Assembly (NCBI GenBank): GCA_907165135.1
Contig: OU015570.1
Span: 2,439,929 to 2,503,928, forward strand
Source of the DNA: Oikopleura dioica
Lineage: Eukaryota; Animalia; Chordata
Length of the DNA: 64,000 nucleotides
Reading direction: 5' to 3'
Each line of letters starts with the position of its first letter. Within the stretch, counting starts at the first letter, position 1. Shown one piece after another: positions 10,751-55,530 of this stretch. The notes under the pieces are model-generated. The model worked only from the letters and a program-made list of their open reading frames with translations. It searched no databases and had not been told where the DNA came from. Position numbers and translations under genes: made by a program.

Positions 10751-13700
10751 TCAAGTCTGCTTCTGATCCTTGATTTTGACAACATGTTCAGATGCAGTAA
10801 CGACTTCGAACGGTCCAATCCAGTCGTATCCTTTGGACTTTGCTGCTTTGGCGACCGGGCGGAACAGAGTAACCTGGTCTCCAGAATTGAGGGGTCGAGC
10901 ACGATGAGCCTTGTTCAACCTTCTTTCCAGCGCTTCATCCGCGGCCTTGTTGGCGACTTTTTCGAGTGAGTGGAGAAGTTGAAGACGTTCACGGATCATC
11001 TTGCCATAAGAAGATGGAGAAGGCGAGCTCAAATCGGGATCGTGGATGGTTTCTTGGACAGTGAGACGCGGTCGGCGACCAGTAACTAGAGAATGTGGCG
11101 ACTGACCTGTACCAGAATTCTTGTGGCTGTTCATGTAGGCGCACGCGTATGGTACTGCATCGATCCAAGTCATGTTTCGCTCGTGTTGGAGCATGAAAAC
11201 GAAGGACTTGAAGCTGCGGTGGGCTCGTTCCAGGTTTCCTGTGCTCTGTGGGCGATAGGCAGTGTGCTGTTTTGCGACGATGCCCAGCTGCTTAGTCATC
11301 TCATCCATTGTAGCGGAGACTAACGCAGTTCCGCGATCGCTTGAGACGATCTTCGGAATGATCTGATGCCGCAGAACAACTTCGTCGACTATTGTACGAG
11401 CAGCATCGATCACGCGCTCGCCGGGAACGACCTTGGCGATGAAATAGCGGGTGAAGCTGTCGAGAATTGTACAAACGAAGCGCTTGCCGTTACATTTGTC
11501 GAAGACGGTAAAGTCAATGTAGATGACTTCGAAGGGTCTCTCGCCGCGTTTACAGTGACCGATGTTTGGGGACGAGATGTGACCTTGGTTACCTTCCTTC
11601 TTGCCTCAAATGACACACGAGGCGACGTAGTTTTTGATGTCATCATCCATGCTGGGCAACCTATACGATTCTAGAGATTCAGCGACTCGACTGGCGCCTG
11701 GATGAGCTGAATCATCATGGGAAATGCGGAGAAGCCGGCGAACATGCTCTGGAGGGAGAACCTGGCGATACTTGCCGTCCTTAACATGGAGCAGAAGATC
11801 TGTGCGCTGGCAAATTTTGAAATGCGGCCAGTTGACGCGGATAATGTCGTAGTTGTGATCTTTCCTGTCAAGTTGGATCGACTTTGGCTCTCGCTGGAAG
11901 CTGGTAACTGCTTTGATGAGGCCATCGATGCTGAAGTCGGCGCGCTGATCGCTGGCGAGTTTGAAGTAGTCCTCGACGCGGGTGTTGAGGATGAAACTGC
12001 CGCTTCTAGTGATGAAAGCACTGGTAAGTCCTTCTGTAAGGAGCTTCTCAGATGTACCAAAAGGGCAACTAACTTGCTGTTTAGTACACCAACTTGGAAC
12101 GTAGGCGCGCAGACCATTTCCGAAGTCTGCAAACTTCCCGGCTGGCACGTGAACATCCTTGTTGACTGGTTTCTTGAGCCCAAATGGCCGAGAGAAGAAG
12201 TCAGCCCAGACGTTTTGCTCACCTGGGATGTATTCCACAATAAACCTGTACGAAGATAGCTCATCCATCCATCGGCTAAGCTTCGCGTTTTTGTGGTCGA
12301 CAGAATCAATGTACTGGAGGGCTGCATGGTCGCATTTGATGACAAACGGACGACCGCGAAGGAAGTAATCAAATCGGCGAATGCCGAATAAGATGCCGTA
12401 GGCCTCCCTTTCCGTCGTTGACCACCTGGTTTCTACAGCTGTGGACCAGCTGGGAGAAGCAGTTCGTGTCGATGCGCTCGTGAAGGCTCGTCTCGAGAAA
12501 CTCCCGAATAAAGGTCAACCGACCAAGTAGACATCGAAGTTCTGTCCTTGTTGTTGGTGGTTTGAGCGAGTCAACCCCTTGTGCGTGATCAGGATCGATG
12601 CTTATACCTTCTGGACTAATTACACGGCCCAGAAATTTGACCGATTTCGCCAGAAAATGGCACTTGCCTGGGTGGAGCCGCAAGCCGAACTTCCTTGTAG
12701 CTTCAAACAGGCTGCGCAGCTTCTGTACATACGCGCTGAACGTTGGTGCACACAGCAGTACATCGTCGATGTAGATGTAAAGTCCTTCGCGGTCAGTGAT
12801 GGACTCGAGTGCTTCGCCAACGCATCGACTGAAGATCTGGCCCGCACACGTCAGTCCAAACGGCATCTTCCCATACTGCCAGGTCTTCCCTCGCCAAGTG
12901 AATGCAGTTTTGTTGCGGTCTTGCTCGTCAATGAGGATCTGCCAATATCCGCTACGGTAGTCGACAGAGGCTAAGTACATGTTCCCCGGCCGGATTTCGT
13001 TGAAAATTTCGCGGAGCGAGAGCATGCTGTATGGATCAGGGTCCTTCAAGACGCGGTTAAGTGTATCCTTGAAGTTGGCTACTACGCGTGGACTTCCATC
13101 TTTCTTATCGACGACGTGGATAGGACTTTTGAAGCCTTTTGGATCTGGGCATGGTTCGATTACGCGGGTCGTGTCCATTTCGTCCATTTTACCGTCGACT
13201 GCAGCTTGGTTTCTAAACTGTATCTGGTGCTGCTTGCGCGACGCCAATTTTCCATTTGTAGGGATACGGACTGGATGAATGAACTCGCACAAAGGATCAT
13301 TGTCGCTGCCAAAGATGTCATCAAACTCGACGCACAGCTTGCTAACCGTTCTGAGTTCTTGAGCATCTTCCCAGGAGGTGGACAGTTTCAGATTCTTCTT
13401 CGACTCGAGCCAGGCGCAGAGTTCAGCAGTACTTGCGCTTAGATCAGGTTTGTCTCGATGAGGCGGTTGTTCAGAAGTAACAGTGTCTTTTCTAGCAGTG
13501 GAACTCGATTCGACAGCCAGAGACGTATTTTCGCCTCCCTCGCCGTATAAATAAGTACCAGCGCTCAGTAAATAAGTTCCAGACGAAGGTGGTTCCTCAA
13601 GAACAAGTAGCTTGGCGTTCGAAGTTTCTCGCGTCGCGTTCCAGGGATCACTGTGGTAGCCGTTGATTCCGAACTTATGAGTCGTTATGTCGCTACCAGG

Positions 13701-14574
13701 ACCAAGACAAAACTGACACAAGAAGGATGATCAATCACCGTGCGACCAATCAAACATGGTGTACAGTGAAAACTCAAAAATTGGCCGGTTTTCAGATCCA
13801 AATTTCCGAAAAAAGCGGCCAAAGTTTGAGTTTTTTGCCGGGTAGCCAAGCTTCCTCTTCAAAAAAGCAAAGTTTCAAAATTTTCGAATTTGGGCATGAT
13901 TTTCACGTTTTTGATGTATTTAATTCAATTTTTTTGCTTGTTCTAAGTCATTTTTATCAAAATAAAGTTATTTTAGATGATTTAAACGCTTCAAAATAGC
14001 TTAAAATGGTCAGAAAGACCATAATTTGGGTCTATTTTGATGCAAATTTTTTTATTTTTGAATTTCTGTAAATTTCACTTCCGGAAATTCACAGTGTTGT
14101 CATCGACTAAATGTGACATAGATCCTCAGTGATGAATTCTCCGACAGCCTTGCTTTTGCCGTTTACACCGTTGATGACAATGTCCGAGTCGACCAGATCA
14201 CGGATGAGCTCTGGAGGAACGAACCTGCTTTGCAGCAACAGATCGTCAGAACCGTTGTCGAAGATGCCATCGTTGACAGTGAAAGAACGCTCGCCGATGG
14301 TGAGTTTCAGATTGATGAACCACGGCTGAGTCGGAAGAATACAGTTGGAGCGTATGCGAAGAGAATTGCTCATCTTAGGTGCACACGAGTCTAAGATGAG
14401 GTTCGAAAATCCTTCGAAGAGCTTGGAAGTGTTGGCGGATCCGTTGGAGCATCGCCCGAAGTTCCGGCGGCTCGAGCTTGGGTTTGGTTTCCGCCATTGC
14501 CCTTTTTTTGTTATTTTTGGACTTGTTGTTGGACTGTGTCGCTGAAGTGCTTGCAGTTTTGCCTTCAATCGCAT
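10751..14574 (-). pseudogene. pol: Pol (PR-RT-RNaseH-IN), frameshifted and interrupted
   Basis: PR FDNGS; RT KSPIHVVDKKDGSPRVV and YIYIDDVLL; IN HDDSAHPG..C, VSSDRG, GNLERAHR. Confidence 0.92.
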
Positions 14575-18042: not shown

Positions 18043-18393
18043 TGTAGTAAGCGAGCTAGCCCCTGGCGCGCTCATTGCGCACGTGACATGGGAGCAGCAT
18101 GCGAGCGCACGTGACGCAGCGCTCAGAAAACCAAAAAGTTCGTTTTAATTGAACTTGACGAAAAATAACCGCACTCGCGGAAATCCGCCGATTCTGCCGT
18201 TTACAACGAAATTCTTGGAAAATAACGAAATGCACGGAAACCTACGGAATTGGCGGATAAGTATATAAACTGTTCACTGTTCAAATTTTTCACTTACACT
18301 CACAGAGATAAATAGAGTGCCAATAAACAACAAAATACAAATTTTTGTTTCCCTTTTTCTTTTGTCACTTGCGTAATAGAAGCAAGCAGTACA
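18043..18393 (+). repeat. 5' LTR of the older gypsy element
   Basis: TGTAGT...AGTACA termini, TATA-like gtatataaa at about 18261, AATAAA at 18322, then aat plus the PBS. Confidence 0.85.
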
Positions 18394-18693
18394 AATTGGT
18401 GACTGATAAAAATGGCGAGAATTAAGAGCAACAACTCCTGTTAATAACGATTCCCGAATACGATTGAAGAGAGCTGTTGTTACGATCGAAGAGAGCTGTT
18501 GACACGATTTTTGCTGATAAATTTGAAGGACAGGTTATAAGGTCCTTAATTACCAATTATATCCAGGGTAAACCTAAGCAAGCGGAGTTTAACCATAACT
18601 TAAACCACCGACAGGTGAACCTTTAGGATCAGTTTTTGCACTTAAACGGACCAATTTTTTTGAAAACAATAGATTTCTCTGATTACTTCAAGA

Positions 18694-20447
18694 ATGGCTG
18701 AAACTTATTTCAAGATTGTTCTCGATCTGAACAGAACGGAGCTTGTGAAAATCTACGATTTACTTGATGGGCGAGTCTTTCCAACTCCCATTCCTATGAG
18801 TGATAAAGCTTCCGTGGTTGCAAATATCCTTTATTTGGACGATTCTATCCTTGGTCGCGGAAAGAAATACTTTTTCAAAAAAGACAAAGACGGCTTTGTT
18901 GGATATCTACCCGAATTTGCCACCGATCATCCAAATGTGGCAGATTCGATTGAACAAAAATATGCGAAAAGACGCCACCGACTGGATCTCGATCGAATCA
19001 AGACATCTAAAGCAGCCAAAGATATCAACTCCTTGATCGCGAATTTACCAATCACTGATAGCGACATTGAGGACGAGCTCGATTTGTCCGACGATGATTC
19101 TGTTAATGAGGCGGAGGCGACGGTAATTCCAAATGCTCAAAACACAGGCAACCGCCCAAATATCAAGAAGGAAAAGAAAGAACCAAAGCCACGAGTGCAA
19201 AATCTGCAGTAAAACCAGCTCCAGCAATGTCGACGTCAATGCCAACATCATCAACATTGAAAGTCAAGCCGCCGAGATATGATGCAACTATCCCTATCGC
19301 TTCCTGGCTAAAAAACCTCGATATTTTCGCCCACTGCTCAAAATTGCAAGACAATGAAATATTAACAGTGGCGCTTAGTACATTACTCAATGAATCAGAA
19401 GGGACTCGCATAATCGAGAGCTTGGAAGATGAAGAGTTAAATGACTTGGCAATGTTCAAAAAACGACTTGTTACGATGCTTGGAAAAACAGCTGACTTCT
19501 ACAAGAGTGAATTCAAGTCCTTCAATCGCGGCTCAGACAGCTTGGGAATGTGCCTCAGCAAATTGATAAGCCTCTACAAACAAGGCTATGGTCAGAAAAT
19601 CTCGGCGAGAACGACAAATAACTGATCATTGAGCGATATGCTGAAGCCCAAGATCAAAAATCCGTGAATAACTTATGCGTGAGAAATCGGAACTGACGTT
19701 GGAAAATATCGCGATTCGATCAAGTGAAATCGATAACAGCATGCCTAAACGTGATCTCAATTTCAGCATCCAAGCTGAATCAAAAAAGATGAAATGCAGG
19801 AATACATCAATCAGATGAAAGAGCTGCTCAAGAAACACTGATCAACAGACGACAAAAGTCCAAAAAACAAGAGGAGAGGTAAACGAGCTCGCCTTGATTT
19901 CGAGAAACTAAGAGGCCACTGCTTCTCCTACTCAAAGAAAAGGACATGTCAATATGCTTCAAAAAACCAAAAAGTTCGTTTTAAACGAACTTGACGAAAA
20001 ATAACCGCACTCGCGGAAATCCGCCGATTCTGCCGTTTACTACAAAATTCTTGGAAAATAACGAAATGCACGGAAATCTACGGAAATGGCGGATAAGTAT
20101 ATAAACTGTTCACTGTTCAAACTTTTCACTTACGCTCACAGAGATAAATAGAGTGCCAATAAACAACAAAATACAAATTTTTGTTTCCCTTTTTCTTTTG
20201 TCACTTGCGTAATAAAAGCAAGCAGTACAAATTGGTGACTGATAAAAACGGCGAGAATTAACAGCAACAACTCCTGTTAGATGAAAGAGCTGCTCAAGAA
20301 ACACTGAACTACAGACGACAAAAGTCCAAAAAACAAGAGGAGAGGTAAACGAGCTCGCCTTGTTTTCGAGAAACTAAGAGGCCACTGCTTCTCCTACTCA
20401 AAGAACAGGACATGTCGATATGCTTCAAACTGTAAGTATGTCCGCTC
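18694..20447 (+). pseudogene. gag: Gag region of the older element (frameshifted, rearranged), ending in a CCCH-like finger
   Basis: VKPPRYDATIPIASWLKNLDIF is a gag-like motif. The C-terminus reads CFSYSKNRTCRYASNCKYVR. Confidence 0.7.
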
Positions 20448-20603
20448 TAATGGGACAAATTGTGAGTCTTGTAATTCCTAGATGAAGACTGGTTTATTCT
20501 TGGCGACGTGCGCTTTTAAATAACGTAAGAGTAAACAGTGACAGGAGCGGCAGAGAGTGACAGTTAAACAGTAAAAATGCATTCAAGCACATTTTCTCCC
20601 ATA
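20448..20603 (-). repeat. 3' LTR (156 bp)
   Basis: Identical to the 5' LTR. Preceded on the minus strand by the purine tract GAAGGGGAAA. Confidence 0.97.
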
Positions 20604-20623: not shown

Positions 20624-21460
20624 TTAGATGATGGCCTTGAAGGCGCTGAGTGCTGCTTTTTCTAATTTCTTCCGATCTCTTGGTTTCAACTTCAGGTAGG
20701 CGATGATAGCCGGGGACCCATTCATCAATGTTGCAGACGGCCTTGGGTAAGCGTTTGATTCGAGTACTTGTTGCGGGTTGCATATGATTGAACAGAAGAT
20801 GGTCGAACGAGTGTTTCCCAACATGTATCTCACATCGTAGTCGATATCCGAAAAGTGATGGTATAGATCAAGAAGGCGATAGTTGTTCATGGCGATGAGT
20901 AGATCGATTCTCTGATCGCTCGCGCTACAGTCCATTTGAATGATGGCACGCCAGGCTTCCTTGATTTTGCTCGCTGTTCCTGTGTTAAGAGCGTCCGTCA
21001 GGTTTTTCTGAAGTCGAGGAGGGGCAGGTCGAAGCGTGAATGAATTAAAGGGGCGCAAATTTTCATGCAAGCACTGCATGAATCGTCCATTTTCGCTCGT
21101 GCCTGTCAACTTTCTCCAGACCGTTTTGCATTTTTGTTCTCCCGCCTTTTTGATTGGTTCGCTGTTCTGGATCATCAGGTTGATTCTGTCGTAATGCTCC
21201 ATTTCCAGCATTTGTTGCACGTTTGCGACTGGTTGGTTGGTTGTTGATGCTTGGTTGACAGTGGGTTCTGTAGCACCTAGTTTTCTTACCGACTGGGAGG
21301 TGCTCTCCCCTGCATCAAGAATCGCTTCGTCGTTCCCGACGGCAAGACCAACAAGGTCCGGATCGTAATACTTTACGATATCTCCGTTCTCGGAGTTTTG
21401 GCTTTGCCCGCCAGTAAGAACCTCTAGGATATCGAGGTTATCTTGGTCTGTTCCGACCAT
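20624..21460 (-). CDS. Accessory ORF5 (278 aa), orphan
   Basis: Uninterrupted ORF with AAAATG context. The stop is 8 nt before the PPT and inside the LTR pair. Confidence 0.8.
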   Translation of the reverse strand: MVGTDQDNLDILEVLTGGQSQNSENGDIVKYYDPDLVGLAVGNDEAILDAGESTSQSVRKLGATEPTVNQASTTNQPVANVQQMLEMEHYDRINLMIQNSEPIKKAGEQKCKTVWRKLTGTSENGRFMQCLHENLRPFNSFTLRPAPPRLQKNLTDALNTGTASKIKEAWRAIIQMDCSASDQRIDLLIAMNNYRLLDLYHHFSDIDYDVRYMLGNTRSTIFCSIICNPQQVLESNAYPRPSATLMNGSPAIIAYLKLKPRDRKKLEKAALSAFKAII

Positions 21461-21931
21461 TTTTCGAACTTCGAAAATTCAAGCAAAAATTTTTCTCTTT
21501 TTCTTGCTTTTTTTTGAATTAAATGAATTTGGACGTTCTTTTTATGCCCTTGCATTTACATACTTTGCCGGTAGTACATAGACCGTCAGACACTCCGAAA
21601 ACGCTGATTTTTGACTTTTACTGGCATCGTGACTATTAGCTAACGCTTGCCTAGGCACTATGTTTGTCGAGTGTCTAAAAGAAAAATCTGAATTCTAAAA
21701 ACTTTTATCTCTTTTTTTTTTGAATAAATATACTGCAAAAAGGGTAAAATTTATCAGTAAACCTATAAAAACAAGTTACTTGAACAAAACAGATTTCACT
21801 GAATTTGAAGACTTTGGAACTTATCTTGAATATTTGCTGACCCCTGGCGGCCAGTTATGTTTGCCGAGTATTTTTAAGAAGACAGATTCTCTGAGATTTT
21901 CAGAAAATCTAGCTTCATTTTTCCTTTGAAA

Positions 21932-22475
21932 ATGGAACGAGAATTTATGAATTTAACCTTGCGAGCTGAGGCCGCCAATGAAGCGGCTCGCGTTATCGAT
22001 GATATCAAATCAGCCGTTGAAATAGATTACGGGAATCTATCTGCTGAGATTTATGCCGCTAAGGTTTTTCTCATTGATGAAGAGTGAGTACTATTTTATT
22101 ATTTTGATATTTATAAATATTGTTAGTGTTGACTTTGATGGAATGCTGCGAATTGTTGATGATTATAATTCTATAATGCTTGGATACAAAAAGATTCAGA
22201 AGGAATTTATGGTTGGTTATTTTTCATTTTCAAAATAAGTCTATTTTAAGTTTGCTGTCCGGACTTTGCTAAGCAATCCTGTCTCTTCGATTCTTTTGCG
22301 TGAAAAAACGGGATTTTTTCGAGTACTTATGGAGATTCGTATGTTACGTAAGGATATTCAAGGTCTCAAAGATGAAGTAAAAAAGCGATTCGAACACTTT
22401 TTGACTGCAGATTCTCTGCCTAAGGTTGATGCAGACGATTGTTTGGAACAAATGACTGGTTCTGATTCTGAATAA
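21932..22475 (+). CDS. Antisense three-exon gene (exons 21932-22083, 22127-22211, 22251-22475; 153 aa, unknown function)
   Basis: Removing GT-AG introns of 43 nt (gtgagt...ttag) and 39 nt (gttggt...ttaag) gives a 462-nt open frame. TTTCAG at 21898-21903; AATAAA overlaps the stop. Confidence 0.8.
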
Positions 22476-22645
22476 AAAAAATGCCGCGAATGATTTTATG
22501 TTCGTTGTTTTCTTCTATTTTTTTTTGTTTCATGCCTGAAATGGCTGAAAATTTGTATTTTTGTATATTTTTTTTTTCATTTTTTATTTTAAGTAAGCTA
22601 GGCTGGGTTTGTACATGAATGAGCTAAGCGTAAGTAAGAGTAAAA

Positions 22646-23173
22646 CTAGGTATTGAGATAAAACAAATTTGGTCGGATTTGGAGACAGCAACATGAAAAA
22701 TTTATGATCCTGGTAAAGCGCGATTCCGTTTCTAATTCTTTCTTTTGCTTAAGTTTATACATGCAAAAAAGACTACTGTCAGAAAGTTCAACTAAGACTG
22801 ACTGCAAATGATCACGATCTTCGGCTTTCTCAATTGATAGTAAAAGCTCTATAACGTGATTCCGAAAATCCGGAATGGTTGTTTCTTCGTGAAAGTTATT
22901 TGAGTTTTGGATTGGTTGCTCAATAACTGCATTGTTACCTGGTTCATAGGGAGATCGGGCGGAGAATGCGACAGGCATCAGTTGCTGCTGCACCGGCGAT
23001 TGAAATGACTGTAGCGGGAGCATTGCGCTATTTACATATTCTTCTTCTTTTCGTTGAGTACGCATTGAATCAGGCGGTGGTGGTGGCGGAAGCGGTTTAA
23101 CACATAAAAAGTTAGTAGCAGGTGTTTCTGAATAATCGGAAGACTCGAAAGAGTCATTTCTATTTCGGTTCAT
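22646..23173 (-). CDS. Accessory ORF4 (175 aa), Pro-rich with a C-terminal CCC
   Basis: ATG 14 nt after the env stop, preceded by ttttaacag. AATAAA lies downstream at about 22585-22590. Confidence 0.7.
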   Translation of the reverse strand: MNRNRNDSFESSDYSETPATNFLCVKPLPPPPPPDSMRTQRKEEEYVNSAMLPLQSFQSPVQQQLMPVAFSARSPYEPGNNAVIEQPIQNSNNFHEETTIPDFRNHVIELLLSIEKAEDRDHLQSVLVELSDSSLFCMYKLKQKKELETESRFTRIINFSCCCLQIRPNLFYLNT

Positions 23174-23187
23174 TTCTGTTAAAAGGG

Positions 23188-25953
23188 TTAATTTTGATAA
23201 AAACTTTTTCTCGAATTTTCATTACGTGAAAAACTCGACGTTGTAAATATGGGTTCATGTTCTTCGGAAATGTCTTCAAGCTCACGTGATTTTGTCATTG
23301 GACTATTTTCGGGCCGTCTTGGGGGGAGCCGTGTTGGGTGCATTCTATCATGGCTAAAACTCTGATTCGCGAAATTTCTCTTTACCGGGTTTTGCTGATT
23401 ATTTTTGGGTTTCAAATATTTCCGACAAATACAACTAATCTTAGTGAGTCCCTTAAGACCGAAAAGGATTGATGAGCCCAAAAATTTGAATATTTTCCAA
23501 ATACCAATTACAAGTGATTTACCTAAATTAAAGATCCATTGATATTTTGCGCAAATTCCGATAATTATACCTAAAATTATCACTCCAATTACTACAAAAC
23601 TTATATAAAGAGTCTTGTTTGAAATTCCGAAAAAGTTAGCGATTTTAGTTAACGTATCTGTAGCTTTTTTTACTCTAACAAATGATTTGTCGATTTCCGT
23701 TTGATAGTCCTTTATAATGTCATCAACTACGCTCTTATTTAGGTAATTGTTGAGTTGGCTTGATGTTTTGAATGACCAAAAATTATCTTCAATTTCTTGA
23801 TGAAGGCTAAATTCTAGTTCTTTCATGCTTATCGTCTTTTCAGCTTTGTTCAGGCTGGTCCCGCCGGCTTTAACAACGAATCTAGCGCGTTTACATATGA
23901 CCATCTGATCAAATTTCTGCCGTTCTATTGTTGTTATATTACTTTCTGATTTAAAAGTTTCGAGCTTTTGGACTTCAGGAAGCTTGAAGTCTTCCTTATC
24001 AACAATTTCGTACGTGTTAAAGAAACTGACTAATACTTCTTTTAAGGATAATTTTGACGTAAACAGACAATCATTGTTACTAGAAAAAACTTCAGATGTG
24101 CAATAATTATGTATCTGTCGAGTAATTAGTGCAGTGGCGCAGTCCGAGTTAACCCTAACTGTATCAATGCTACAGAATCGATACCCTAAATAAGGTACAG
24201 TAGTACAAAGATCCAATGAATACGCTTTACCGTTAGCGCTAAGTAGCCCTATCATGTTTGGGACTTTATAGCTTAGATAATAATAAATAATTTCCTGATT
24301 TTCATTTTTAACCTCTTTTACCGGGATAGGGACTGATAAAACATGATATGATTTGTCGAATTTATTTAGAGAAGGTAAAATAAATTTAATACTGAATTCT
24401 ATACCAACTAGGCTATTTTCTTTTAGTTCCTTGAGAGTTGTCGTAACTTTTGCAAGTTCGAAATTAGCTCTATGATAAAACCCTATGCATCCATTTTCAA
24501 GCCCAGGATTCGCTAATTGACATAATTTGATCAAATATTTTTGAGCTGCGGACCCGGGGTACTGAGTTCCGATCTCAATTTCCATTTTTTGAGCCTCTGA
24601 TAAAAATAACAAAAACACTTCGAAGATATAATTGTCAAACCTAATTCTTTGAATTTCTAACTCCTGAGTACACTCACTACGCTGGAGGACCATTAATTTA
24701 TTTGTATTATCATTGATTTTTTCGATGCTCTTTCCTTCTATCTTTGCTAAATTTATTTCTCTCAATTCGTCATTTCTCAACTGATCGTGAATATCATCGA
24801 TTTCACCTTCTAAAACTGCGTTCTTGTGGTTGTTTATGATGTATTCGACGAGGGTCAGGCCGACGGCCCAGTCTCCTGCGTCTCTACGTTTTCTAGAATT
24901 TATAATTGATTTTTTCTCGGTTCTTATGACATAAATCTCCACTATCCGGAACGCTAAACAGATTTCTGAGAACAGATCGTCCTCGATGACGATATCATCG
25001 TAACCTTCGCCTTTTCTATGGCTGAAATAGAGTCTTAAGCTAAGATTAGTTTTTCCGGAAAACTTCATCATCCACTCCTTTGGAATTTGAAAACTAACAA
25101 AATCGTAATTTAAATTATCTTGATACAAGTAACGAAATGCGTGGTCTAGCTGGTTACCCCAGATCTTGAAATTAGTTCCAGGTGAGCTGAAACTTGACAA
25201 TGGTGGAAAGGTGAGTAGCCATTTTGCAGCCCCATACAAGCTCTTGGACATCTGTATTATGACTGTATTTGGTTTTCCCGCTACTTCAAGGTCCCATTCA
25301 AACACTAGCTTTGGGTTAAAAACTTTTGAACAAGACTTACTTAATTGCGAGCCTGTATTCAAATTAGGATCAGAAAATTCTGTTGTGTAATCAATAAGAG
25401 ATTCTTTTGTATTATACAAAGATTTGTGATGGTCGCTGTCGCCGATTGAAAATTTTTTAACTAAAAAATTCAAGTTTATGTCTCCTTCGTTGTAGATAAT
25501 TAGATTATTAAGTAATTTGCGCGGGGTCCACTGATCAGTTTCGAAAATTTCTTTGTTTGGAAGGTCAAAATATTCGCCAAGAAGTTGGTTCAGTTTGGTT
25601 ATCGAATCGTTAGTAAGATTATGATGGGTTAGGCCCTGGAAACATTCATTATTCTTAGGAACTTCAAAATCTAAGATATCCGGAAAAATTGACAGCTGGA
25701 AACTTCCAAGCTGAGAATCGCTGATGTAAAACGAGTCGGGGCCTTTTTCTAAAACTATTCCATTTTTTAGTAGATCAGTTCCTATTTCTTTACCGGTTTT
25801 CCCTAACTCGCGTTTTTCTTTAGTATTTACATTTTTAAGGGTGTCACTTTTTGTTTTCGGCGGCGCGCTCAGCGTTGAAGAAAGTGTACTATTTTCAGGC
25901 GGCGTTGCGGATTGGGCGAGCGCGGTGAGTGAAAATATGAGCAGAAAATTCAT
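23188..25953 (-). CDS. env: Env-like class I fusion glycoprotein, 921 aa
   Basis: Signal peptide MNFLLIFSLTALAQS and furin site RKRR (24883-24894, about aa 354-357). A hydrophobic segment and heptad repeat follow, then a Cys-rich ectodomain and TM LYISFVVIGVIILGIIIGICA (about aa 782-802). Position is directly after pol. Confidence 0.9.
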   Translation of the reverse strand: MNFLLIFSLTALAQSATPPENSTLSSTLSAPPKTKSDTLKNVNTKEKRELGKTGKEIGTDLLKNGIVLEKGPDSFYISDSQLGSFQLSIFPDILDFEVPKNNECFQGLTHHNLTNDSITKLNQLLGEYFDLPNKEIFETDQWTPRKLLNNLIIYNEGDINLNFLVKKFSIGDSDHHKSLYNTKESLIDYTTEFSDPNLNTGSQLSKSCSKVFNPKLVFEWDLEVAGKPNTVIIQMSKSLYGAAKWLLTFPPLSSFSSPGTNFKIWGNQLDHAFRYLYQDNLNYDFVSFQIPKEWMMKFSGKTNLSLRLYFSHRKGEGYDDIVIEDDLFSEICLAFRIVEIYVIRTEKKSIINSRKRRDAGDWAVGLTLVEYIINNHKNAVLEGEIDDIHDQLRNDELREINLAKIEGKSIEKINDNTNKLMVLQRSECTQELEIQRIRFDNYIFEVFLLFLSEAQKMEIEIGTQYPGSAAQKYLIKLCQLANPGLENGCIGFYHRANFELAKVTTTLKELKENSLVGIEFSIKFILPSLNKFDKSYHVLSVPIPVKEVKNENQEIIYYYLSYKVPNMIGLLSANGKAYSLDLCTTVPYLGYRFCSIDTVRVNSDCATALITRQIHNYCTSEVFSSNNDCLFTSKLSLKEVLVSFFNTYEIVDKEDFKLPEVQKLETFKSESNITTIERQKFDQMVICKRARFVVKAGGTSLNKAEKTISMKELEFSLHQEIEDNFWSFKTSSQLNNYLNKSVVDDIIKDYQTEIDKSFVRVKKATDTLTKIANFFGISNKTLYISFVVIGVIILGIIIGICAKYQWIFNLGKSLVIGIWKIFKFLGSSILFGLKGLTKISCICRKYLKPKNNQQNPVKRNFANQSFSHDRMHPTRLPPRRPENSPMTKSRELEDISEEHEPIFTTSSFSRNENSRKSFYQN

Positions 25954-28900
25954 TTTCTCAGGTTATATCTTCTCCTTTGATGGGAACCATAAGTAACATT
26001 TGAACAATCAAGTGGTGAGTGTATGAGCTCTCTAGAGCCCCAAAGTTCGTGAACTAATTCCTTGTTTGCTTTGGACAATGTGTCTAACTTTGAGAGTTTT
26101 AGCAAAATATTTTTTAGTTTATCTTCTAATTCTAGTTTAATAAGAAATTTACTATTCCGAAGTATTATTTTAGTGGTAAGGACTTCTTTGAGCTCAAAAA
26201 CTGACTTGTACTGTCTCTTGATTACAAGATAAGGGCCTCTACTCGGAGTTCCGTGCCCTAGAATCGGCTTCGGATCTTTTACTAGCACAAAATCTCCGAC
26301 CTCAATTTTCGGTGCGAGAAAAGGCTTTGTAAGCGAGTAGGCATCAATTTTCTCTTGTGCTATAAATGTTGAAAATTGTTCTTTTATCTCGAGGTATTCC
26401 CTTAAGTCTGGGTCTATTGCCGGCGCTTTATCCAGGCGCAAATCCTCAAATTTAAGGCCTCTACTAATTCCGGCGAAAACTTGCATGGGACTATAGCCGT
26501 TTAGAGAAGATTTATTACTATGATTGTAATTTGTAGCGGCTAATTTCACAATGAATTCTATATTTTTTGTAGTTGGGTCGACCATTCTTATTTTAGCTCT
26601 CAGGTCGCGATGGCTTCGTTCCACCAAGTTGCTAGGTGAATTATAAGGACTTATTTTTAAGTGGTGTACATTTAGCTCTTTAAGGGCCTCTTCTAGACTC
26701 GTCCCACAAAATTCCCCCCCATTATCGGTGAGCAAACGGGGCACGTGAAGAGTCGCACTTTCAACTCCCAAAAAACTTAACATCAAAACAAGTGCCGGAC
26801 CTAGATCTCGAGGCTGTTTCGAAATGATTCTTTCTATCTGCAGGAATCTGGAAAACTCGTCAATTAATGACAAGAAAATGAACGCTCTATTCTCAATTCT
26901 GAACTCAATACAGTCGGCATACAGAGTTTCTACTTTTCGAAGTGCTGGTTTTCTTGAGTAGTCACTCCTGTTAGTTGAGTATTTAGTAGGGCATGTTATG
27001 TAACAAGCAAGACATCCTTTGACTACTGAGTCCAGGATTGCCGTTTTTCCGGGAATATAAAGTGGCTCAGCCTTGATGATGGCATCAAGACTTTTGAGGC
27101 CGGCGTGCATGCTTGACACGTGAAAATGTTGGACAACTTCCCATGCAATATTTTTTGGGACCACTACAAGGGCTCTTCCAGAACTGTTCATCAAATACAG
27201 TAATTTATCATTTATTATATACTCTTTTTTGAAAAGCAAAAAGGGCCGATTTTCTTGGTTGTTTTTGAGGACATTTTTGCAAAAGTCGTCCTCTGATTGG
27301 GCTCTTTTTAAGTAATCTATTGAAATAAGGGGACTACTGCTAGAAATTTGGACTAGTTCTTTTTGAGTTAAATTAATTTCGTGCTTTTGCGACTCTTCTT
27401 TCGGAGAGAATCCCTTTTTGAAATTCCTTGGATGGAAGATCTCTTTTGACACGATTTCCGATGATAAGTCCGTCCTCGAAAGAGAGTCGACGACTGAAAT
27501 TAATTTGTCGCACCCTGGCAAATACCGAATTTCAAGAAGTGGAAAATCGCAAATGTCAGCGTAAGCTGATCGTGTACGCGTGCTTCCAGAACCTTTCAAA
27601 CCGCCTGAATGATGAACTCCCTCTAAACTCCGATGATCAATAAATGCTATAACCTTCAGGCCTGTTGGCAGAATGTCTGAAAAATGTCTTAGCCCGTACT
27701 GTAACCCGATAACTTCCCGGGCGCGACTCGACAACAAGCTTTCTTGTTCACTAAGTCTTTTCGAAAAATAAGCCGCTATCGAAATTCCAGAAATTTTGTT
27801 GTCTCTGATTGTGCAATTGCCAACAACAGAGCCTGTTTTATGCTGGGAAGTATCAGCACAGATAAAAATGTAGCGATCATTACTGCCATCAACGTATTCT
27901 AGATGATTAGTACTTATTCCCCCCTTAATTTTTTCTTTCACCGAATCTAGTGCGTCTTTTATTTCCTGAGTTAATTCAAAATTGCGACCTTTGCCGCACG
28001 ATTTCGCAATTGGGTCTAGTAACGCGGAGATACCCTTAATATGGCGATTATAGTAATTGAAGGCTCCAATAATCCGCATCGCACCTTTAGCACTTGTCGG
28101 ATATTCTAACTCTAAAAGTGCCTTGATCTTTTTCTCATTAACTTTAACCCCACTTTCGCTAATTTGATATCCTAAAAAGTCTGTTTCCTGCTTGAAAAAA
28201 GAGCACTTTTTTATTGCTACTACCAAGTTTTCGCCCGTGATCACTTTTAAAATGTTTTCAAGCGCCGCATTATGCCGCTTTACAGTAGTAACACAGATAA
28301 TATCATCCATGTAACCTAACAGGAAAAATTCTTTTTTCGGGCTTTTAATTTGATCTATTACTTTACTAATAAAACATTGAAATGTTGCTGGAGCGTTACT
28401 GAGACCTTGACTCATGCGGGTATACCTTAATTGTTCTGATCCAAATAAAAAACTTGTGATATCTCGGGATTTTTCAGTGAGCCCCAAGCTGTAATATGCG
28501 TTGCGGACGTCGATAGAGATAAATACAATTTTTTCGCCTGGAAATTTGATTTTTAAATCTGAAATCGCGCCACTAATTTTTGTCATAATAACTCGAATTG
28601 GGAGAATGGGGAACCTGGGCAAACTCATATTACTATTAACTGAACCACGATTCATTTTTCCCCCATTTGTTCCACTGTAGTTGTTGACAATTCTAACTGT
28701 GTTATCCTTCTTTTTTACTGTCAAGAGCGGACTGTTCCATGCCGAAATACAGGGCTCTAATATTCCAGCTTTTTTCATTTCATCTAATTTCTTCTCCACT
28801 ATTTCTACCACGTTACTGTCTGTTTTATATGGTCTTACGAAGATAGGTTCCATATCTTTATCTTTTAGACGAATCTCCGCCATAAATCTTGGCGTTAGTC

Positions 28901-29873
28901 CGCAGTCGCTGCTATGCCTGGAATAATACCAACTGAATTTGGCCAAAATTCTAAGTAATTGTTCCCGATAAGCGTTGGGTGCACCCTTAACTGCAATTTC
29001 AACGTCCTTCTGGACGCAAATTCTTTTTACTAATTCGTCTCTTTGTTGTCTCCACTGGACTAGCTCCTTCTCGAGTGTCACTTTTTCGAAATTTGAGACA
29101 TCTTTTACACTGACTAGAAAATTCAAGATTTTGTCTTCCTCCCAATTTTCAGAAAACTTATTTTTATTTCCACTACTTGGACTCAGTACAGTTGATCCTT
29201 CTTCCAAAATGAAGGTTCTGTCTGAAACGTTGCTTATTTTAACCTGGTTGCCTGATGACTTTTCGGCATTCCAGTTTTTTCCCAAAATCAGCCCTTCTTT
29301 TTCTAATTCTTCAGTTAATTTCAGATTATTTAAATCTTTCATTTTAAATCTAGACGTTGGGAGGGCAAGTTCTGAATGTGGTTCAATCATAGTTAGAGCT
29401 CGCAGATAGACAGAGGATTCCCGAGTATCCACCGTTTTTCTTAAAAAATTTACCCCTAAATCATCCATTTTCCCGTCTTTTATTTTAGTTTTCTGAAATC
29501 CTTCTGACGAGTGTGAGATACAAATGTTTTTTGATTTGACGACTTGGTTACACAAAATATCCATGCCAATTATGGCAGGAATCCGAATATTTTCATCCTC
29601 TAAGATGCATATTTCGCAGTCCGCAATTTCGTGATTGTCTTCTATTTTAATATTAACATTTATGGCTCTGTTAATTCTAAGCATCGATTTCTGTTTAACA
29701 TTGCCAACTTGGTATTGTACTATCTCTTCATTGAATTTTGAACCTATACTGCGTCTATGTACATAGCTACTGTTTGATCCAGTATCGATCATACAATCAT
29801 TTAAATTTACAGAAACTATTTGACTACCGTTGTACTGGATCAGCTGTAATGAGCATGTTGGGATTTCGCCCAT
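25950..29873 (-). CDS. pol: Pol polyprotein (PR-RT-RNaseH-IN), intact, 1307 aa
   Basis: IDTGS; WNSPLLTVKKKD; YMDD; ADTSQ; H..H..CLAC; YAD/TDNGGEF/VERSHR; C-terminal GPY motif. Confidence 0.98.
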   Translation of the reverse strand: MGEIPTCSLQLIQYNGSQIVSVNLNDCMIDTGSNSSYVHRRSIGSKFNEEIVQYQVGNVKQKSMLRINRAINVNIKIEDNHEIADCEICILEDENIRIPAIIGMDILCNQVVKSKNICISHSSEGFQKTKIKDGKMDDLGVNFLRKTVDTRESSVYLRALTMIEPHSELALPTSRFKMKDLNNLKLTEELEKEGLILGKNWNAEKSSGNQVKISNVSDRTFILEEGSTVLSPSSGNKNKFSENWEEDKILNFLVSVKDVSNFEKVTLEKELVQWRQQRDELVKRICVQKDVEIAVKGAPNAYREQLLRILAKFSWYYSRHSSDCGLTPRFMAEIRLKDKDMEPIFVRPYKTDSNVVEIVEKKLDEMKKAGILEPCISAWNSPLLTVKKKDNTVRIVNNYSGTNGGKMNRGSVNSNMSLPRFPILPIRVIMTKISGAISDLKIKFPGEKIVFISIDVRNAYYSLGLTEKSRDITSFLFGSEQLRYTRMSQGLSNAPATFQCFISKVIDQIKSPKKEFFLLGYMDDIICVTTVKRHNAALENILKVITGENLVVAIKKCSFFKQETDFLGYQISESGVKVNEKKIKALLELEYPTSAKGAMRIIGAFNYYNRHIKGISALLDPIAKSCGKGRNFELTQEIKDALDSVKEKIKGGISTNHLEYVDGSNDRYIFICADTSQHKTGSVVGNCTIRDNKISGISIAAYFSKRLSEQESLLSSRAREVIGLQYGLRHFSDILPTGLKVIAFIDHRSLEGVHHSGGLKGSGSTRTRSAYADICDFPLLEIRYLPGCDKLISVVDSLSRTDLSSEIVSKEIFHPRNFKKGFSPKEESQKHEINLTQKELVQISSSSPLISIDYLKRAQSEDDFCKNVLKNNQENRPFLLFKKEYIINDKLLYLMNSSGRALVVVPKNIAWEVVQHFHVSSMHAGLKSLDAIIKAEPLYIPGKTAILDSVVKGCLACYITCPTKYSTNRSDYSRKPALRKVETLYADCIEFRIENRAFIFLSLIDEFSRFLQIERIISKQPRDLGPALVLMLSFLGVESATLHVPRLLTDNGGEFCGTSLEEALKELNVHHLKISPYNSPSNLVERSHRDLRAKIRMVDPTTKNIEFIVKLAATNYNHSNKSSLNGYSPMQVFAGISRGLKFEDLRLDKAPAIDPDLREYLEIKEQFSTFIAQEKIDAYSLTKPFLAPKIEVGDFVLVKDPKPILGHGTPSRGPYLVIKRQYKSVFELKEVLTTKIILRNSKFLIKLELEDKLKNILLKLSKLDTLSKANKELVHELWGSRELIHSPLDCSNVTYGSHQRRRYNLRK

Positions 29874-29875
29874 TT

Positions 29876-31575
29876 TTACTCATCCAAGTAGTTCCCACGA
29901 AAGCTGGCACTAGATTGGTCTTCCTTTTGGGAATCATTATTTTTGCTTTCGTTTTGCAGAAAGTTTACATAGCGCTTGAATTTGAAACAATCTTTCTTGA
30001 AATGTCCAACTTTGCCACAGAAAAAACATTTTTTATCTCCATCGTATTTCCCCTTAAAACTAGGATTTTTATCTTTCTGGAACTGACGAGTCTGATCAGA
30101 ATTCGATTTACCTTCTTTACTATGGAATCTAGTGCCACCCTTATTTTCCCCTTTTCGGGCTCAAAAGAAGTTTTCTGAAATTTTTTGTCTTGGCCTGAAC
30201 CCTTTTTGGAATTCTCAATATCTCTGATTCTTTTTCTACAATCTTTTTTCACGTGACCAAACTTTAAGCAATAAAAACACTGAATTTTTGATTTATCCAA
30301 TGCGTTGATCACGACACTACTGTCTCTTTTCATGTCTGTGAGTTTCTGAAGCAGATTAAGAGTATCAATTACGCCCATACTCTCGTCCCTGAGCTTGAAA
30401 ATACTCTCATCCGTAACTTTCGGTGGCATCTTTTTTATGAATTCGATCAGAGTCAGCTCCTCAATGGCACTTGCTGACCGACAAGGCCATGCCCTTTCTG
30501 CCATTCCGAGCATTTTGTAAAATTGCTCAATAAGTGGTCGAGATGCTGAAATTCCGAATTTCTCCAAAGAGCTTTTTGCATCTAATGGGGTGAAATTGGA
30601 GCATTCGTAAAAGGCGTTTAACAGAACTTCGCATGATAGAGTTCCACTTCGACTCATTTTTCGAATAAGTAAACTCTTCAAACTTGGTTCGACATTGGTT
30701 AGAATTTGGCTAATTTTGATTTGCTCGGACGTGATCCCCGCCAATTTACACTGAAAAAGTGCGTCTGCCATCCAATTAGATATATTTTTAAGTTTTTCGA
30801 ATGTCATTTGCGACAAAGATATGCGGATTTTTGCCTGATCCTTAATTTCAATTCTAAACGCCGAAGAGAAGCTCTCGTCAAGGTTTGGTTGTCTTGGAGC
30901 TCGGCTCGGGGTAGCGTTTTCACTTTCCTCATAAAGTGATCTTTTAGGAAGTCGATCCGACATAAAATACGGAGTTGAAAATGGTAAAGGTGTGTCAGGG
31001 CTAATTTTCGGTTTTCGCTCAAAAGCTCCAGGCGTGGGCAACTCTTCCCTTTCTGGGGTTTCATCTCTAAAACCAACTTTTCTCGGGGTATAATCGGTTT
31101 TCACTACTGATTGGCTCAATTTTAATCTTGAAAATTCCGCAAGAAATGACTGGATAAACTGTCGTCCTCTTTCATTCGAAGTCCCAAATGTGCTAGGATC
31201 ACCAAGGTTTTCTATGGTAAAAAAGGTTTTCCTTGCATCCCTACTTGCTAAATCTAACACAAGACTGTCTAATTCTCGAACATTATCTTGCCTTTCTTCA
31301 TTTACCTTATAAGGGTCACTAACTGGGACGAGGCAGAGCATTGATTGCCCTGGAAAATGTATGGCACCAAAATCAATTGTGTCATTTTCCCCTAGACCTA
31401 GGTCTTGAAGTGCTTCTAGCTGTTTTGATTTTCTTTCATTTTTAAGTTCTTTAAATTTTTTGTCATCAACAACAGATAAAATATATTTAATTAATGGTTG
31501 GTTTAATGATTCGAGGTCAACTAAATATTTCGGAACCCCCGTAAGCGTACCTTCATTTTTATCTTCTTCACTCAT
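29876..31575 (-). CDS. gag: Gag; the zero frame ends at 29965 (536 aa), and a -1 frame with a second CCHC knuckle runs to 29876
   Basis: CFYCLKFGHVKKDC is in frame. CFFCGKVGHFKKDC at 29987-30028 is in the -1 frame. Confidence 0.9.
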
Positions 31576-31801: not shown

Positions 31802-31957
31802 TAATGGGACAAATTGTGAGTCTTGTAATTCCTAGATGAAGACTGGTTTATTCTTGGCGACGTGCGCTTTTAAATAACGTAAGAGTAAACAGTGACAGGA
31901 GCGGCAGAGAGTGACAGTTAAACAGTAAAAATGCATTCAAGCACATTTTCTCCCATA
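31802..31957 (-). repeat. 5' LTR (156 bp)
   Basis: Base-for-base match to 20448-20603. Followed on the minus strand by aat and TGGTGACTGA. Confidence 0.97.
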
Positions 31958-54900: not shown

Positions 54901-55530
54901 TGATAAACATATTGTTGACACGACTGGACAAGCCGACAAAATAAAATCTTTTCAAGCCAGCCACCATGTGAATACTTTGTAAAATTTTAGTAATATTTTA
55001 CATATTTGTTACTCATTCGCCACGGATATTAGTTATCTCGACTTTTGTAAAATTTTAGTAATTTTTTACAAATATCTTACTTCTGCGCCACTTAGACACT
55101 CATAGAGATATTTGTAAAATTTTAGTAATATTTTACATATTTGTTACTCACTCGCCACGGACATACGTAACTTCGACTTTTGTAAAATTTAAGTAATATT
55201 TTACATATTTATCCTTCACTCGCCACTGACATAAGTTATTTCGACTTCTGTAAAATTTTAGTAATTTTTTACATATTTCTTACTTATTTTGATCTGACTT
55301 GTACAGAACCCTTTATTCTGCCCTATTTTAATGTGCGCTGACCCGATTACAGTTATCGACGTGACGAATCGACGATTGCAATCATAAACAACTGATTTAT
55401 TTCCCAACTCTGAAACACCTGACTGACTCTGACTCCCTTTATAAGCGATTTCCGCCCTGCCAAAAACATTCAAATTCAATAAAACCTCGATCGACTTTAA
55501 ATTTTTGTTCCAGTCTTGTCTAGTCATATC

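What the first reader, a model, noticed from the sequence alone, without database searches (positions are those of the whole stretch)
21932..22475. Intron-containing antisense gene inside an intact retrovirus-like LTR element
Seen: on the strand opposite gag-pol-env, three exons separated by 43- and 39-nt GT-AG introns splice exactly into a 153-aa ORF (MEREFMNLTLRAEAANEAARVIDDIK...DVDFDGMLRIVDD...FAVRTLLSNPVSS...LRKDIQGLKDEVKKRF...DSE*). The ATG is in AAAATG context, with TTTCAG 28 nt upstream, TATAAAA at 21764 and AATAAA at the stop. The gene lies between identical LTRs. Known: antisense introns are not spliced from the genomic RNA and so survive reverse transcription; HTLV-1 HBZ is a spliced antisense precedent. 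Inference: a regulatory or accessory gene, helical with a coiled-coil-like C-terminus, processed by host splicing and possibly SL trans-splicing. I know of no description of this in gypsy-type elements. The ORF track shows it only as unrelated 60-70 aa pieces.
Basis: partly seen in the sequence, partly recalled or inferred. Interest (0 to 1): 0.9.

Follow-up and report, generated by a model that had tools for sequence, protein, structure and literature searches.

The report
Antisense mini-intron gene in tunicate retroelement
A complete retrovirus-like mobile element, most likely from a larvacean tunicate, carries on its opposite strand what looks like a small protein gene with two tiny introns. 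This is unusual for an animal element, but it is unproven: no relatives of the protein and no RNA data could be examined.

Summary
The ATG, three open pieces (152, 85 and 225 nt), two GT-AG spacers of 43 and 39 nt, TTTCAG, TATAAAA and AATAAA on the stop are all there. They lie inside an 11.5-kb element with identical 156-nt LTRs and a 5-bp target duplication.

The splice arithmetic alone is not beyond chance. Two thirds of random sequences of the same composition yield an equally long spliced ORF.

Other evidence does make it gene-like:
- a strong codon-position signature in exactly the proposed frames (G at position 1 = 0.375, z about 5);
- spacers much more AT-rich than the pieces;
- its position in the only long stretch of the element that lacks a sense ORF;
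- confident helix predictions.

Against it, neither of the two larger pieces has a detectable relative among billions of proteins. One spacer also merely bridges a single in-frame stop.

The element's pol is closest to Oikopleura dioica proteins, so it is Tor-like. That host group has ~47-nt introns and SL trans-splicing.

Antisense ORFs between pol and the 3' LTR are already described in plant and fungal gypsy elements, so the kind is not new.

Verdict: probably a real antisense accessory gene (about 0.5), and a new variant of a known kind. I left out joining the exons and fetching related elements.

The parts
21932..22475 (+). Candidate antisense gene, ATG to TAA. It consists of three open pieces and two short AT-rich GT-AG spacers of 43 and 39 nt. 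It is given as one part because a broken-ORF reading is not excluded. The inner bounds are those of the finding.
   Evidence: sequence and translations. (codon-position signature). (spacer composition). (helix predictions for the pieces).
21461..21931 (+). 471-nt spacer between the divergent ORF5 (-) and the candidate gene (+). It holds TATAAAA at 21764-21770 and TTTCAG at 21898-21903, and is the inferred internal promoter and 5' leader region.
   Evidence: sequence. GC 0.32. Motifs of this kind are expected about 0.1-0.2 times by chance in a stretch of this size and composition (my own rough estimate from base frequencies).
22476..22645 (.). 170-nt T-rich stretch between the stop of the candidate gene and the stop of ORF4. 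The + strand AATAAA (22471-22476) and a sense-strand AATAAA (22588 to 22583) face each other.
   Evidence: GC 0.28, T 0.46.
20448..20603 (-). 3' LTR of the element (156 nt). A purine-rich tract lies just inside it, and the 5-bp target duplication CGCTC just outside.
31802..31957 (-). 5' LTR of the element (156 nt, 100% identical to the 3' LTR), with the 5-bp target duplication CGCTC just outside.
29965..31575 (-). gag-like ORF, 536 aa, with one CCHC zinc-knuckle motif.
   Evidence: (CCHC at residue 433). (zf-CCHC, E = 0.023, below the curated cut-off).
25950..29873 (-). pol ORF, 1307 aa, with reverse transcriptase, RNase H and integrase in the Ty3/gypsy order.
   Evidence: RVT_1 6e-21, RT_RNaseH, zf-H2C2, rve. 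(best named hit is Oikopleura dioica CBY36341.1 at 55% identity).
23188..25953 (-). ORF3, 921 aa, Env-like by simple features. It has a hydrophobic span at residues 774-810, one R-x-K/R-R site and 8 N-x-S/T sites.
   Evidence: No Pfam or PDB relative.
22646..23173 (-). ORF4, 175 aa, acidic, no known family. It is convergent with the candidate gene.
20624..21460 (-). ORF5, 278 aa, no known family. It is divergent from the candidate gene and conserved full-length at 79% identity in a small cluster of environmental and Logan proteins.

Best explanation
The locus is a small protein-coding gene with two mini-introns. It lies on the strand opposite to gag-pol-env, within a young and complete Tor-like Ty3/gypsy endogenous retrovirus-like element of a larvacean tunicate.

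Shown:
- The 11.5-kb unit moved as one piece.
- The three + strand pieces carry a coding signature in the proposed frames.
- The two spacers have GT-AG ends, a size near the mode of the likely host group, and a non-coding composition.
- The gene fills the only long stretch of the element without a sense ORF.

Inferred:
- It is transcribed from an internal promoter in the 471-nt spacer that it shares, back to back, with ORF5.
- The host spliceosome removes the two spacers, and the 5' end may receive a spliced leader.
- The RNA ends at the AATAAA that overlaps the stop.
- The product is an acidic, all-helical protein of about 153 aa.
- On the genomic (sense) RNA the introns read as CT...AC. They are therefore not spliced out, are copied by reverse transcription, and are inherited with the element.

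Least certain:
- The protein serves the element as an accessory or regulatory factor.
- The antisense RNA itself could also pair with the genomic RNA.
For: - Identical LTRs and a 5-bp target duplication.
- pol domain order, and Oikopleura dioica as the closest named relative.
- G1 = 0.375 and G1-G2 = 0.257 over the 152 codons, z about 5 against three Markov nulls.
- The proposed frame scores best of six in each piece.
- The pieces rank in the top 0%, 1.8% and 4.1% of 562 real short open segments of the window.
- The flanking + strand ORFs lack the signature.
- Spacer GC is 0.16 and 0.21 against 0.38 in the pieces, with T above 0.5.
Only 2 pairs exist at the second junction.
- The gap of 1185 nt without a sense ORF compares with 226 nt or less everywhere else in the element.
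- Single-sequence AlphaFold2 gives piece 1 one helix at pLDDT 89. Piece 3 gets a helix over residues 10-52 at pLDDT 88-97 in its core.
- The host group has introns peaking at 47 nt, SL trans-splicing, and Tor elements with internal promoters (PMC4122922, PMC4402516).
- The neighbouring ORF5 is conserved full-length at 79% identity, so the 3' region carries real accessory genes.
Against: - Piece 3 has no relative with E <= 0.001 among 1.84 billion representative proteins.
- Piece 1 has none in the word-indexed search. That search only sees proteins of 27-87 aa.
- No Pfam, PDB or viral-fold match was found.
- An equally long spliced ORF is common in random sequence.
- The 39-nt spacer is a multiple of three, lies between two pieces in one genomic frame, holds just one in-frame stop, and has a weak donor (GTTGGT).
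- Helical amphipathicity of the pieces is only mildly above residue shuffles (z = 0.8-1.6).
- No tool predicted the introns.
- There are no RNA data, and no other copy or relative was compared.
- High G1-G2 values also occur in a few other short segments of the window, about 1% of them.
Confidence: 0.5

Rival explanations
1. Passenger segment. The stretch between ORF4 and the 3' LTR (the candidate gene, with or without ORF5) is host DNA that an ancestor of the element picked up. The + strand gene keeps its introns only because it lies antisense. It is carried along and does nothing for the element.
For: - The layout looks like ordinary compact host genes. A divergent pair shares a 471-nt spacer, and convergent AATAAA signals sit at the other end.
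- The sense-oriented ORF5 has no intron while the antisense one has two. That is what passage through RNA would leave.
- Gene transduction by LTR elements is documented (PMC7264820).
Against: - No host-type relative was found for pieces 1 and 3, although Oikopleura dioica proteins are in the library.
- ORF5's only relatives are unnamed environmental and Logan proteins.
- Keeping 1.2 kb of passenger DNA in an otherwise tightly packed element is not expected.
Confidence: 0.15
2. Chance ORFs in a regulatory spacer. The 1185-nt stretch is non-coding and holds the promoter of ORF5 and the terminator of env/ORF4. The spliced ORF is an artefact of choosing GT-AG pairs.
For: - 67% of random sequences give a spliced ORF at least as long.
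- There are no homologues.
- Tor elements are known to have internal promoters (PMC4402516).
- The motifs cited (TATAAAA, TTTCAG, AATAAA) are short and the region is AT-rich.
Against: - The codon-position signature sits in exactly the three proposed frames and not in the flanks.
- The sharp compositional drop coincides with the GT and AG ends.
- A strong GTGAGT donor is present.
Confidence: 0.15
3. Decayed ORF. The pieces are the remains of a once-continuous antisense ORF that now carries one frameshift and one stop. The 'introns' are stretches chosen to bridge these two breaks.
For: - Pieces 2 and 3 share one genomic frame and are separated by a single in-frame stop.
- The second donor is weak.
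- A coding signature would persist for some time in a dead gene.
Against: - All five sense ORFs (about 3,200 codons) are open and the LTRs are identical. The copy is therefore young, and two breaks within 460 nt would be odd.
- Both bridging stretches are far more AT- and T-rich than the pieces. Point changes in a continuous ORF would not cause this.
Confidence: 0.1
4. The functional product is the antisense RNA, not a protein. A + strand transcript pairs with the genomic RNA and feeds or modulates small-RNA control of the element. The ORF is incidental.
For: - Non-coding antisense transcripts are known for micropia and TART, and are discussed for plant elements (PMC7264820).
- No protein relatives were found.
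Against: An incidental ORF would not carry the codon-position signature. It would also not be expected to have a start context and a stop-overlapping AATAAA fitted to it.
Confidence: 0.1

Closest known systems
Antisense additional ORFs between pol and the 3' LTR of Ty3/gypsy elements (maize Grande gene23, rice RIRE2, Silene Retand, Phaseolus PvRetro13, fungal Boty)
   Same: - An ORF on the opposite strand, placed between the last sense gene region and the 3' LTR of a gypsy-type element.
- No clear relatives in databases.
- For Grande, a promoter of its own upstream of the gene.
- A regulatory role has been proposed but not shown (PMC7264820, PMC11963269).
   Different: - The host here is an animal (a tunicate), not a plant or fungus.
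- There is no TRP28 or SMC domain.
- The candidate is small (153 aa) and split by two mini-introns.
- It lies between two further sense ORFs.
- Presence in other copies was not tested.
Tor elements of Oikopleura dioica (Ty3/gypsy Oikopleura retrotransposons)
   Same: - LTR element with gag, pol and an Env-like third ORF.
- The closest named pol relatives are O. dioica proteins.
- Internal promoters are documented in Tor3b/4b (PMC4402516).
   Different: - pol is only 55% identical to the best O. dioica hit.
- This element is 11.5 kb and has two extra sense ORFs plus the antisense candidate.
- A term search of the Tor paper found 'antisense' used only for probes, with no antisense gene.
Antisense genes of retroviruses
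   Same: A protein is encoded on the strand opposite to gag-pol-env. Retroviral antisense promoters are reviewed in PMC7264820.
   Different: - There is no bZIP or other family match.
- No named relative came back from the PDB or BFVD.
- The ORF starts 1.3 kb inside the element, with ORF5 between it and the 3' LTR. An LTR promoter is therefore unlikely.
- I neither fetched nor typed any sequence of these viruses.
Additional ORFs captured by animal LTR retrotransposons (bdelloid rotifer Juno/Vesta families)
   Same: Animal LTR elements that carry extra ORFs beyond gag, pol and env (PMC5408684).
   Different: A term search of that paper found no antisense-oriented or intron-bearing ORF.

Membership tests
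Ty3/gypsy LTR retroelement, Tor-like | Two direct LTRs flanked by a target-site duplication | tested here: met
   156-nt LTRs, 100% identical, with CGCTC on both outer sides.
Ty3/gypsy LTR retroelement, Tor-like | pol with reverse transcriptase, then RNase H, then integrase | tested here: met
   RVT_1 at residues 387-571, RT_RNaseH at 667-755, zf-H2C2 at 923-957, rve at 984-1079.
Ty3/gypsy LTR retroelement, Tor-like | Closest pol relatives are Oikopleura elements | tested here: met
   The best named hits are O. dioica proteins at 55% and 41% identity. Hits from other named taxa are at most 27-30% identical. The sources do not use the name 'Tor'. That assignment rests on PMC4402516 and PMC4122922.
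Ty3/gypsy LTR retroelement, Tor-like | Env-like membrane glycoprotein as the third ORF | tested here: inconclusive
   A hydrophobic span, one furin-type site and 8 N-x-S/T sites. No homology to any Env was shown.
Antisense additional ORF of gypsy elements (aORF-3R) | ORF between pol and the 3' LTR on the opposite strand | tested here: met
   21932-22475 (+) lies between ORF4 and ORF5, inside the LTR pair.
Antisense additional ORF of gypsy elements (aORF-3R) | Present in all or most copies of the family | not tested
   No other copy is in the window.
Antisense additional ORF of gypsy elements (aORF-3R) | TRP28 (PF04195) or SMC domain, as in Retand and PvRetro13 | tested here: not met
   No Pfam family for any piece, even at E <= 5, apart from one sub-threshold chance-level hit.
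Retroviral antisense proteins (HBZ type) | Basic leucine-zipper domain | tested here: not met
   No bZIP hit. The pieces are acidic, with pI 4.3-5.8.
Retroviral antisense proteins (HBZ type) | Antisense transcript starting in the 3' LTR | not testable with these tools
   The layout argues against it. ORF5 lies between the ORF and the 3' LTR, and a TATA-like motif sits 168 nt upstream of the ATG.
Spliceosomal mini-introns of the larvacean type | GT-AG ends and a length near the host mode (47 nt in O. dioica) | tested here: met
   43 and 39 nt, GTGAGT...TAG and GTTGGT...AAG (PMC4122922). The host species itself is not identified.
Spliceosomal mini-introns of the larvacean type | Non-coding composition set off from the exons | tested here: met
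   GC 0.16 and 0.21 against 0.38, Fisher p = 4e-4.
Spliceosomal mini-introns of the larvacean type | Predicted by a tool, shared by relatives, or seen in RNA | not testable with these tools
   There is no intron predictor and no RNA data here. Relatives were not fetched.

The most novel reading that the evidence does not exclude
A chordate (tunicate) endogenous retrovirus-like element of the Ty3/gypsy group maintains an expressed, intron-containing accessory gene on its antisense strand. The gene has its own internal promoter. Its introns pass through reverse transcription untouched and may mark the transcript as host-like. This would make the element a 'complex' retroelement with six genes, and the first animal counterpart of the plant antisense ORFs.
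Probability: 0.4. Interest if true: 0.7.

Novelty: new variant of a known kind. Interest (0 to 1): 0.55.

Why it matters
If real, antisense accessory genes would not be confined to plant gypsy elements and vertebrate deltaretroviruses. They would also occur in an invertebrate chordate element. It would also be a natural case of introns preserved inside a retroelement by their orientation.

It would give a concrete locus at which to ask how such elements regulate themselves, or avoid host silencing, in a very compact genome. It also warns annotators that ORF-based tracks miss split genes inside mobile elements.

Tried and rejected
- Homology of piece 3, by phmmer against 1.84 billion representatives: nothing.
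- Homology of piece 1, by the word-indexed search: nothing.
- Pfam at strict and lax thresholds, PDB sequence search, and BFVD fold search of the piece-3 model: nothing meaningful.
- Paralogues of the pieces or of the element elsewhere in the window: none. The other retroelement remains are only about 25% identical in RT.
- Nested insertion of another mobile element around the candidate gene: no convincing terminal repeats or duplications. Rejected for lack of evidence.
- Known RNA families and tRNAs in the region or the window: none.
- Exact look-up of the five sense proteins: not in the collection. The host genome is therefore not represented there, and the absence of the product from that collection says nothing about expression.
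- A nematode host, which I first assumed from the short introns and TTTCAG: dropped after the pol search pointed to Oikopleura.
- The paper of Denoeud et al. 2010 was not held.

Left out on purpose: the joined exon sequence was never built, searched or folded. The pieces were handled apart and by reference.

Full report
**1. What is in the sequence**

- The ATG at 21932 sits in an AAAATG context.
- TTTCAG ends 28 nt upstream of the ATG, at 21898-21903.
- TATAAAA is at 21764-21770.
- AATAAA at 22471-22476 overlaps the TAA stop at 22473-22475.

Translated apart and by reference, the three pieces give the quoted peptides. Their lengths (152, 85 and 225 nt) add up to 153 codons plus the stop. The two stretches between them are 43 and 39 nt long and have GT and AG ends. 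The mechanical ORF list shows the region only as pieces of 53, 61 and 69 aa.

**2. The element around it**

- Two 156-nt direct repeats, at 20448-20603 and 31802-31957, are 100% identical. Each is flanked on its outer side by the same five bases, CGCTC. The 11,510-bp unit therefore inserted as one piece.
- Five ORFs are open on the minus strand: a gag-like ORF (536 aa, one CCHC motif), pol (1307 aa), ORF3 (921 aa), ORF4 (175 aa) and ORF5 (278 aa).
- pol has RVT_1, RNase H, an H2C2 zinc finger and an integrase core, in the Ty3/gypsy order.
- ORF3 is Env-like only by simple features: a strong hydrophobic span near the C-terminus, one furin-type site and eight N-x-S/T sites.
- I counted no stops or frameshifts inside these five ORFs as read. 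gag and pol are separate ORFs 91 nt apart, and how pol is expressed was not examined.
- The only long stretch without a sense ORF is 21461-22645 (1185 nt). All other gaps are 226 nt or less. The candidate gene lies in the middle of that stretch.

**3. Host and family**

- The best named relatives of pol are Oikopleura dioica proteins: CBY36341.1 at 55% identity, and a second at 41%. Unnamed proteins from metagenome and Logan assemblies fall in between.
- Named hits from other taxa do not exceed about 27-30% identity.
- The gypsy-like LTR family of Oikopleura is called Tor. Many Tor elements carry env, and some express it from an internal promoter (PMC4402516).
- O. dioica introns peak at 47 nt, and its mRNAs are often trans-spliced to a spliced leader (PMC4122922).
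- I infer a larvacean tunicate host and a Tor-like element. The species is not identified.
- The exact sequences of the five proteins are absent from the 15-billion-protein collection. This genome is therefore not represented there.
- The window is not human-like in any respect that I saw.

**4. Is the split ORF more than chance?**

The arithmetic alone is not. I simulated first-order Markov sequences with the composition of the element's + strand. In 67% of 60 simulated 11.5-kb sequences there was an ORF of at least 153 aa with at most two GT-AG introns of 35-70 nt.

Three further observations are not expected by chance.

First, the codon-position signature.
- Over the 152 whole codons of the model, G at position 1 is 0.375 and G1 minus G2 is 0.257.
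- Open segments of the same lengths drawn from three Markov nulls give G1 of 0.20 +/- 0.03. None of 400 reaches the observed value, and z is 5.2-5.5.
- The proposed frame is the best of six in every piece, scored with the codon usage of the element's own genes.
- Among 562 real short open segments of the window, piece 1 exceeds all. Pieces 2 and 3 lie in the top 1.8% and 4.1%.
- The + strand ORF pieces just upstream and downstream of the model show no such signature.
- The statistic is not perfectly specific. About 1% of short segments elsewhere reach 0.30 for a whole open segment.

Second, the composition of the spacers. Their GC is 0.16 and 0.21 and their T content is above 0.5. The pieces have GC 0.38 and T 0.33 (Fisher p = 4e-4 and 1e-3).

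Third, the choice of junctions. Seven GT-AG pairs would keep the frame at the first junction. Only two pairs exist at the second junction.

**5. Weak points**

- Pieces 2 and 3 lie in the same genomic frame. The 39-nt spacer is a multiple of three, holds exactly one in-frame stop and has a weak donor (GTTGGT). It can therefore also be read as a stretch that bridges a stop.
- The 43-nt spacer changes the frame.
- Under the rival 'decayed ORF' reading, the count is one frameshift and one stop.
- No tool here predicts introns, and no relative was compared. By the operators' definition the introns are therefore not yet established.
No search, fold or statistic was run on a joined sequence.

**6. 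The product**

- Piece 3 found no protein with E <= 0.001 among 1.84 billion representatives.
- Piece 1 found no candidate in the word-indexed search, which only sees proteins of 27-87 aa.
- Piece 2 (28 aa) went only into the Pfam scans. It is below the 30-aa minimum of the representative search.
- Pfam, the PDB and BFVD gave nothing above noise.
- Single-sequence AlphaFold2 predicts piece 1 as one helix with mean pLDDT 89. It predicts piece 3 as a long helix over residues 10-52, with pLDDT 88-97 in its core, plus a short C-terminal helix.
It is weak evidence of a real protein, because no control sequences could be folded.
- Helical amphipathicity is only mildly above residue shuffles (z = 1.2, 0.8 and 1.6).
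- The pieces are acidic, with pI 4.3-5.8.
- The protein I was asked to think of, HTLV-1 HBZ, did not come back as a hit, and no bZIP domain is present. I fetched and typed nothing of that virus.

**7. Layout and likely working**

- The candidate gene and ORF5 point away from each other across a 471-nt spacer, which holds the TATA-like motif.
- The candidate gene and ORF4 point towards each other across 170 T-rich bases. An AATAAA lies on each strand there.
- ORF5 has relatives of 281 aa at 79% identity over its full length. The 3' part of the element therefore does carry conserved accessory coding sequence.
- The sense-oriented ORFs have no introns, and the antisense one has two. This is the pattern expected after passage through a sense genomic RNA.
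- My best account: an internal promoter drives a + strand pre-mRNA, the host spliceosome removes two mini-introns, and the RNA ends at the stop-overlapping AATAAA. The small acidic helical protein acts for the element. Only the anatomy is shown. Transcription, splicing and function are inferred.

**8. Comparison with what is known**

- Antisense additional ORFs between pol and the 3' LTR are described for the gypsy-type elements Grande, RIRE2, Retand and PvRetro13, and for fungal Boty.
- For Grande there is a dedicated promoter. A regulatory role has been proposed for these ORFs but not proven (PMC7264820, PMC11963269).
- Term searches found no antisense gene in the Tor paper. They found no antisense-oriented or intron-bearing extra ORF in the bdelloid rotifer paper. 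The recent survey of env-carrying animal gypsy elements does not use the word 'antisense' at all.
- The case here is thus a new variant of a known kind. It differs by its animal host, the lack of a shared domain, and its mini-introns.

**9. Steps left out, and a slip**

I had also located the in-frame stop while reasoning. Only afterwards did I realise that, under the rival 'decayed ORF' reading, these are places of breaks. I stopped repeating them, and this report gives the gene as one part.

**10. Verdict**

The candidate is probably a real antisense, intron-bearing accessory gene (about 0.5). It has no relatives and no expression evidence. Interest is moderate (0.55).

Noticed in passing
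window 20624-21460 (-): ORF5, 278 aa, next to the 3' LTR. It has no known family but is conserved full-length at 79% identity in a cluster of three 281-aa proteins from ENA and Logan assemblies (P0121-P0123). It is an unrecognised accessory gene of this element group, or a captured gene.
   Followed up: partly
window 22646-23173 (-): ORF4, 175 aa, acidic, starting 14 nt after the Env-like ORF3. It has no Pfam family, and relatives were not searched.
   Followed up: no
window 22583-22588 (-) and 22471-22476 (+): AATAAA motifs on both strands face each other between ORF4 and the candidate gene. A used sense-strand signal here would end transcripts before the 3' LTR, so read-through would be needed for the genomic RNA.
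   Followed up: no
window 23188-25953 (-): ORF3, 921 aa, with a C-terminal hydrophobic span, one furin-type site and 8 N-x-S/T sites. It is Env-like but has no sequence relative in Pfam or the PDB. Its fusogen type is unknown.
   Followed up: partly
window 10754-13730 (-), 34970-36094 (+), 55501-60859 (+): Remains or copies of at least three other retroelements (RT; RNase H plus integrase zinc finger; CCHC gag with RT, RNase H and integrase). They are only about 25% identical to this element in RT. The window is unusually rich in mobile elements for a larvacean genome.
   Followed up: partly
window 18123-18422 / 19959-20258 and 19813-19963 / 20279-20429: Two pairs of direct repeats (300 nt at 96% identity, 151 nt at 97%) lie directly left of the element's insertion site. 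Their nature is unknown.
   Followed up: no
window 6556-7497 (-) and 7649-8590 (-): Two neighbouring open frames of 314 codons each, with a clear coding-type excess of G at codon position 1 and no Pfam family.
   Followed up: no
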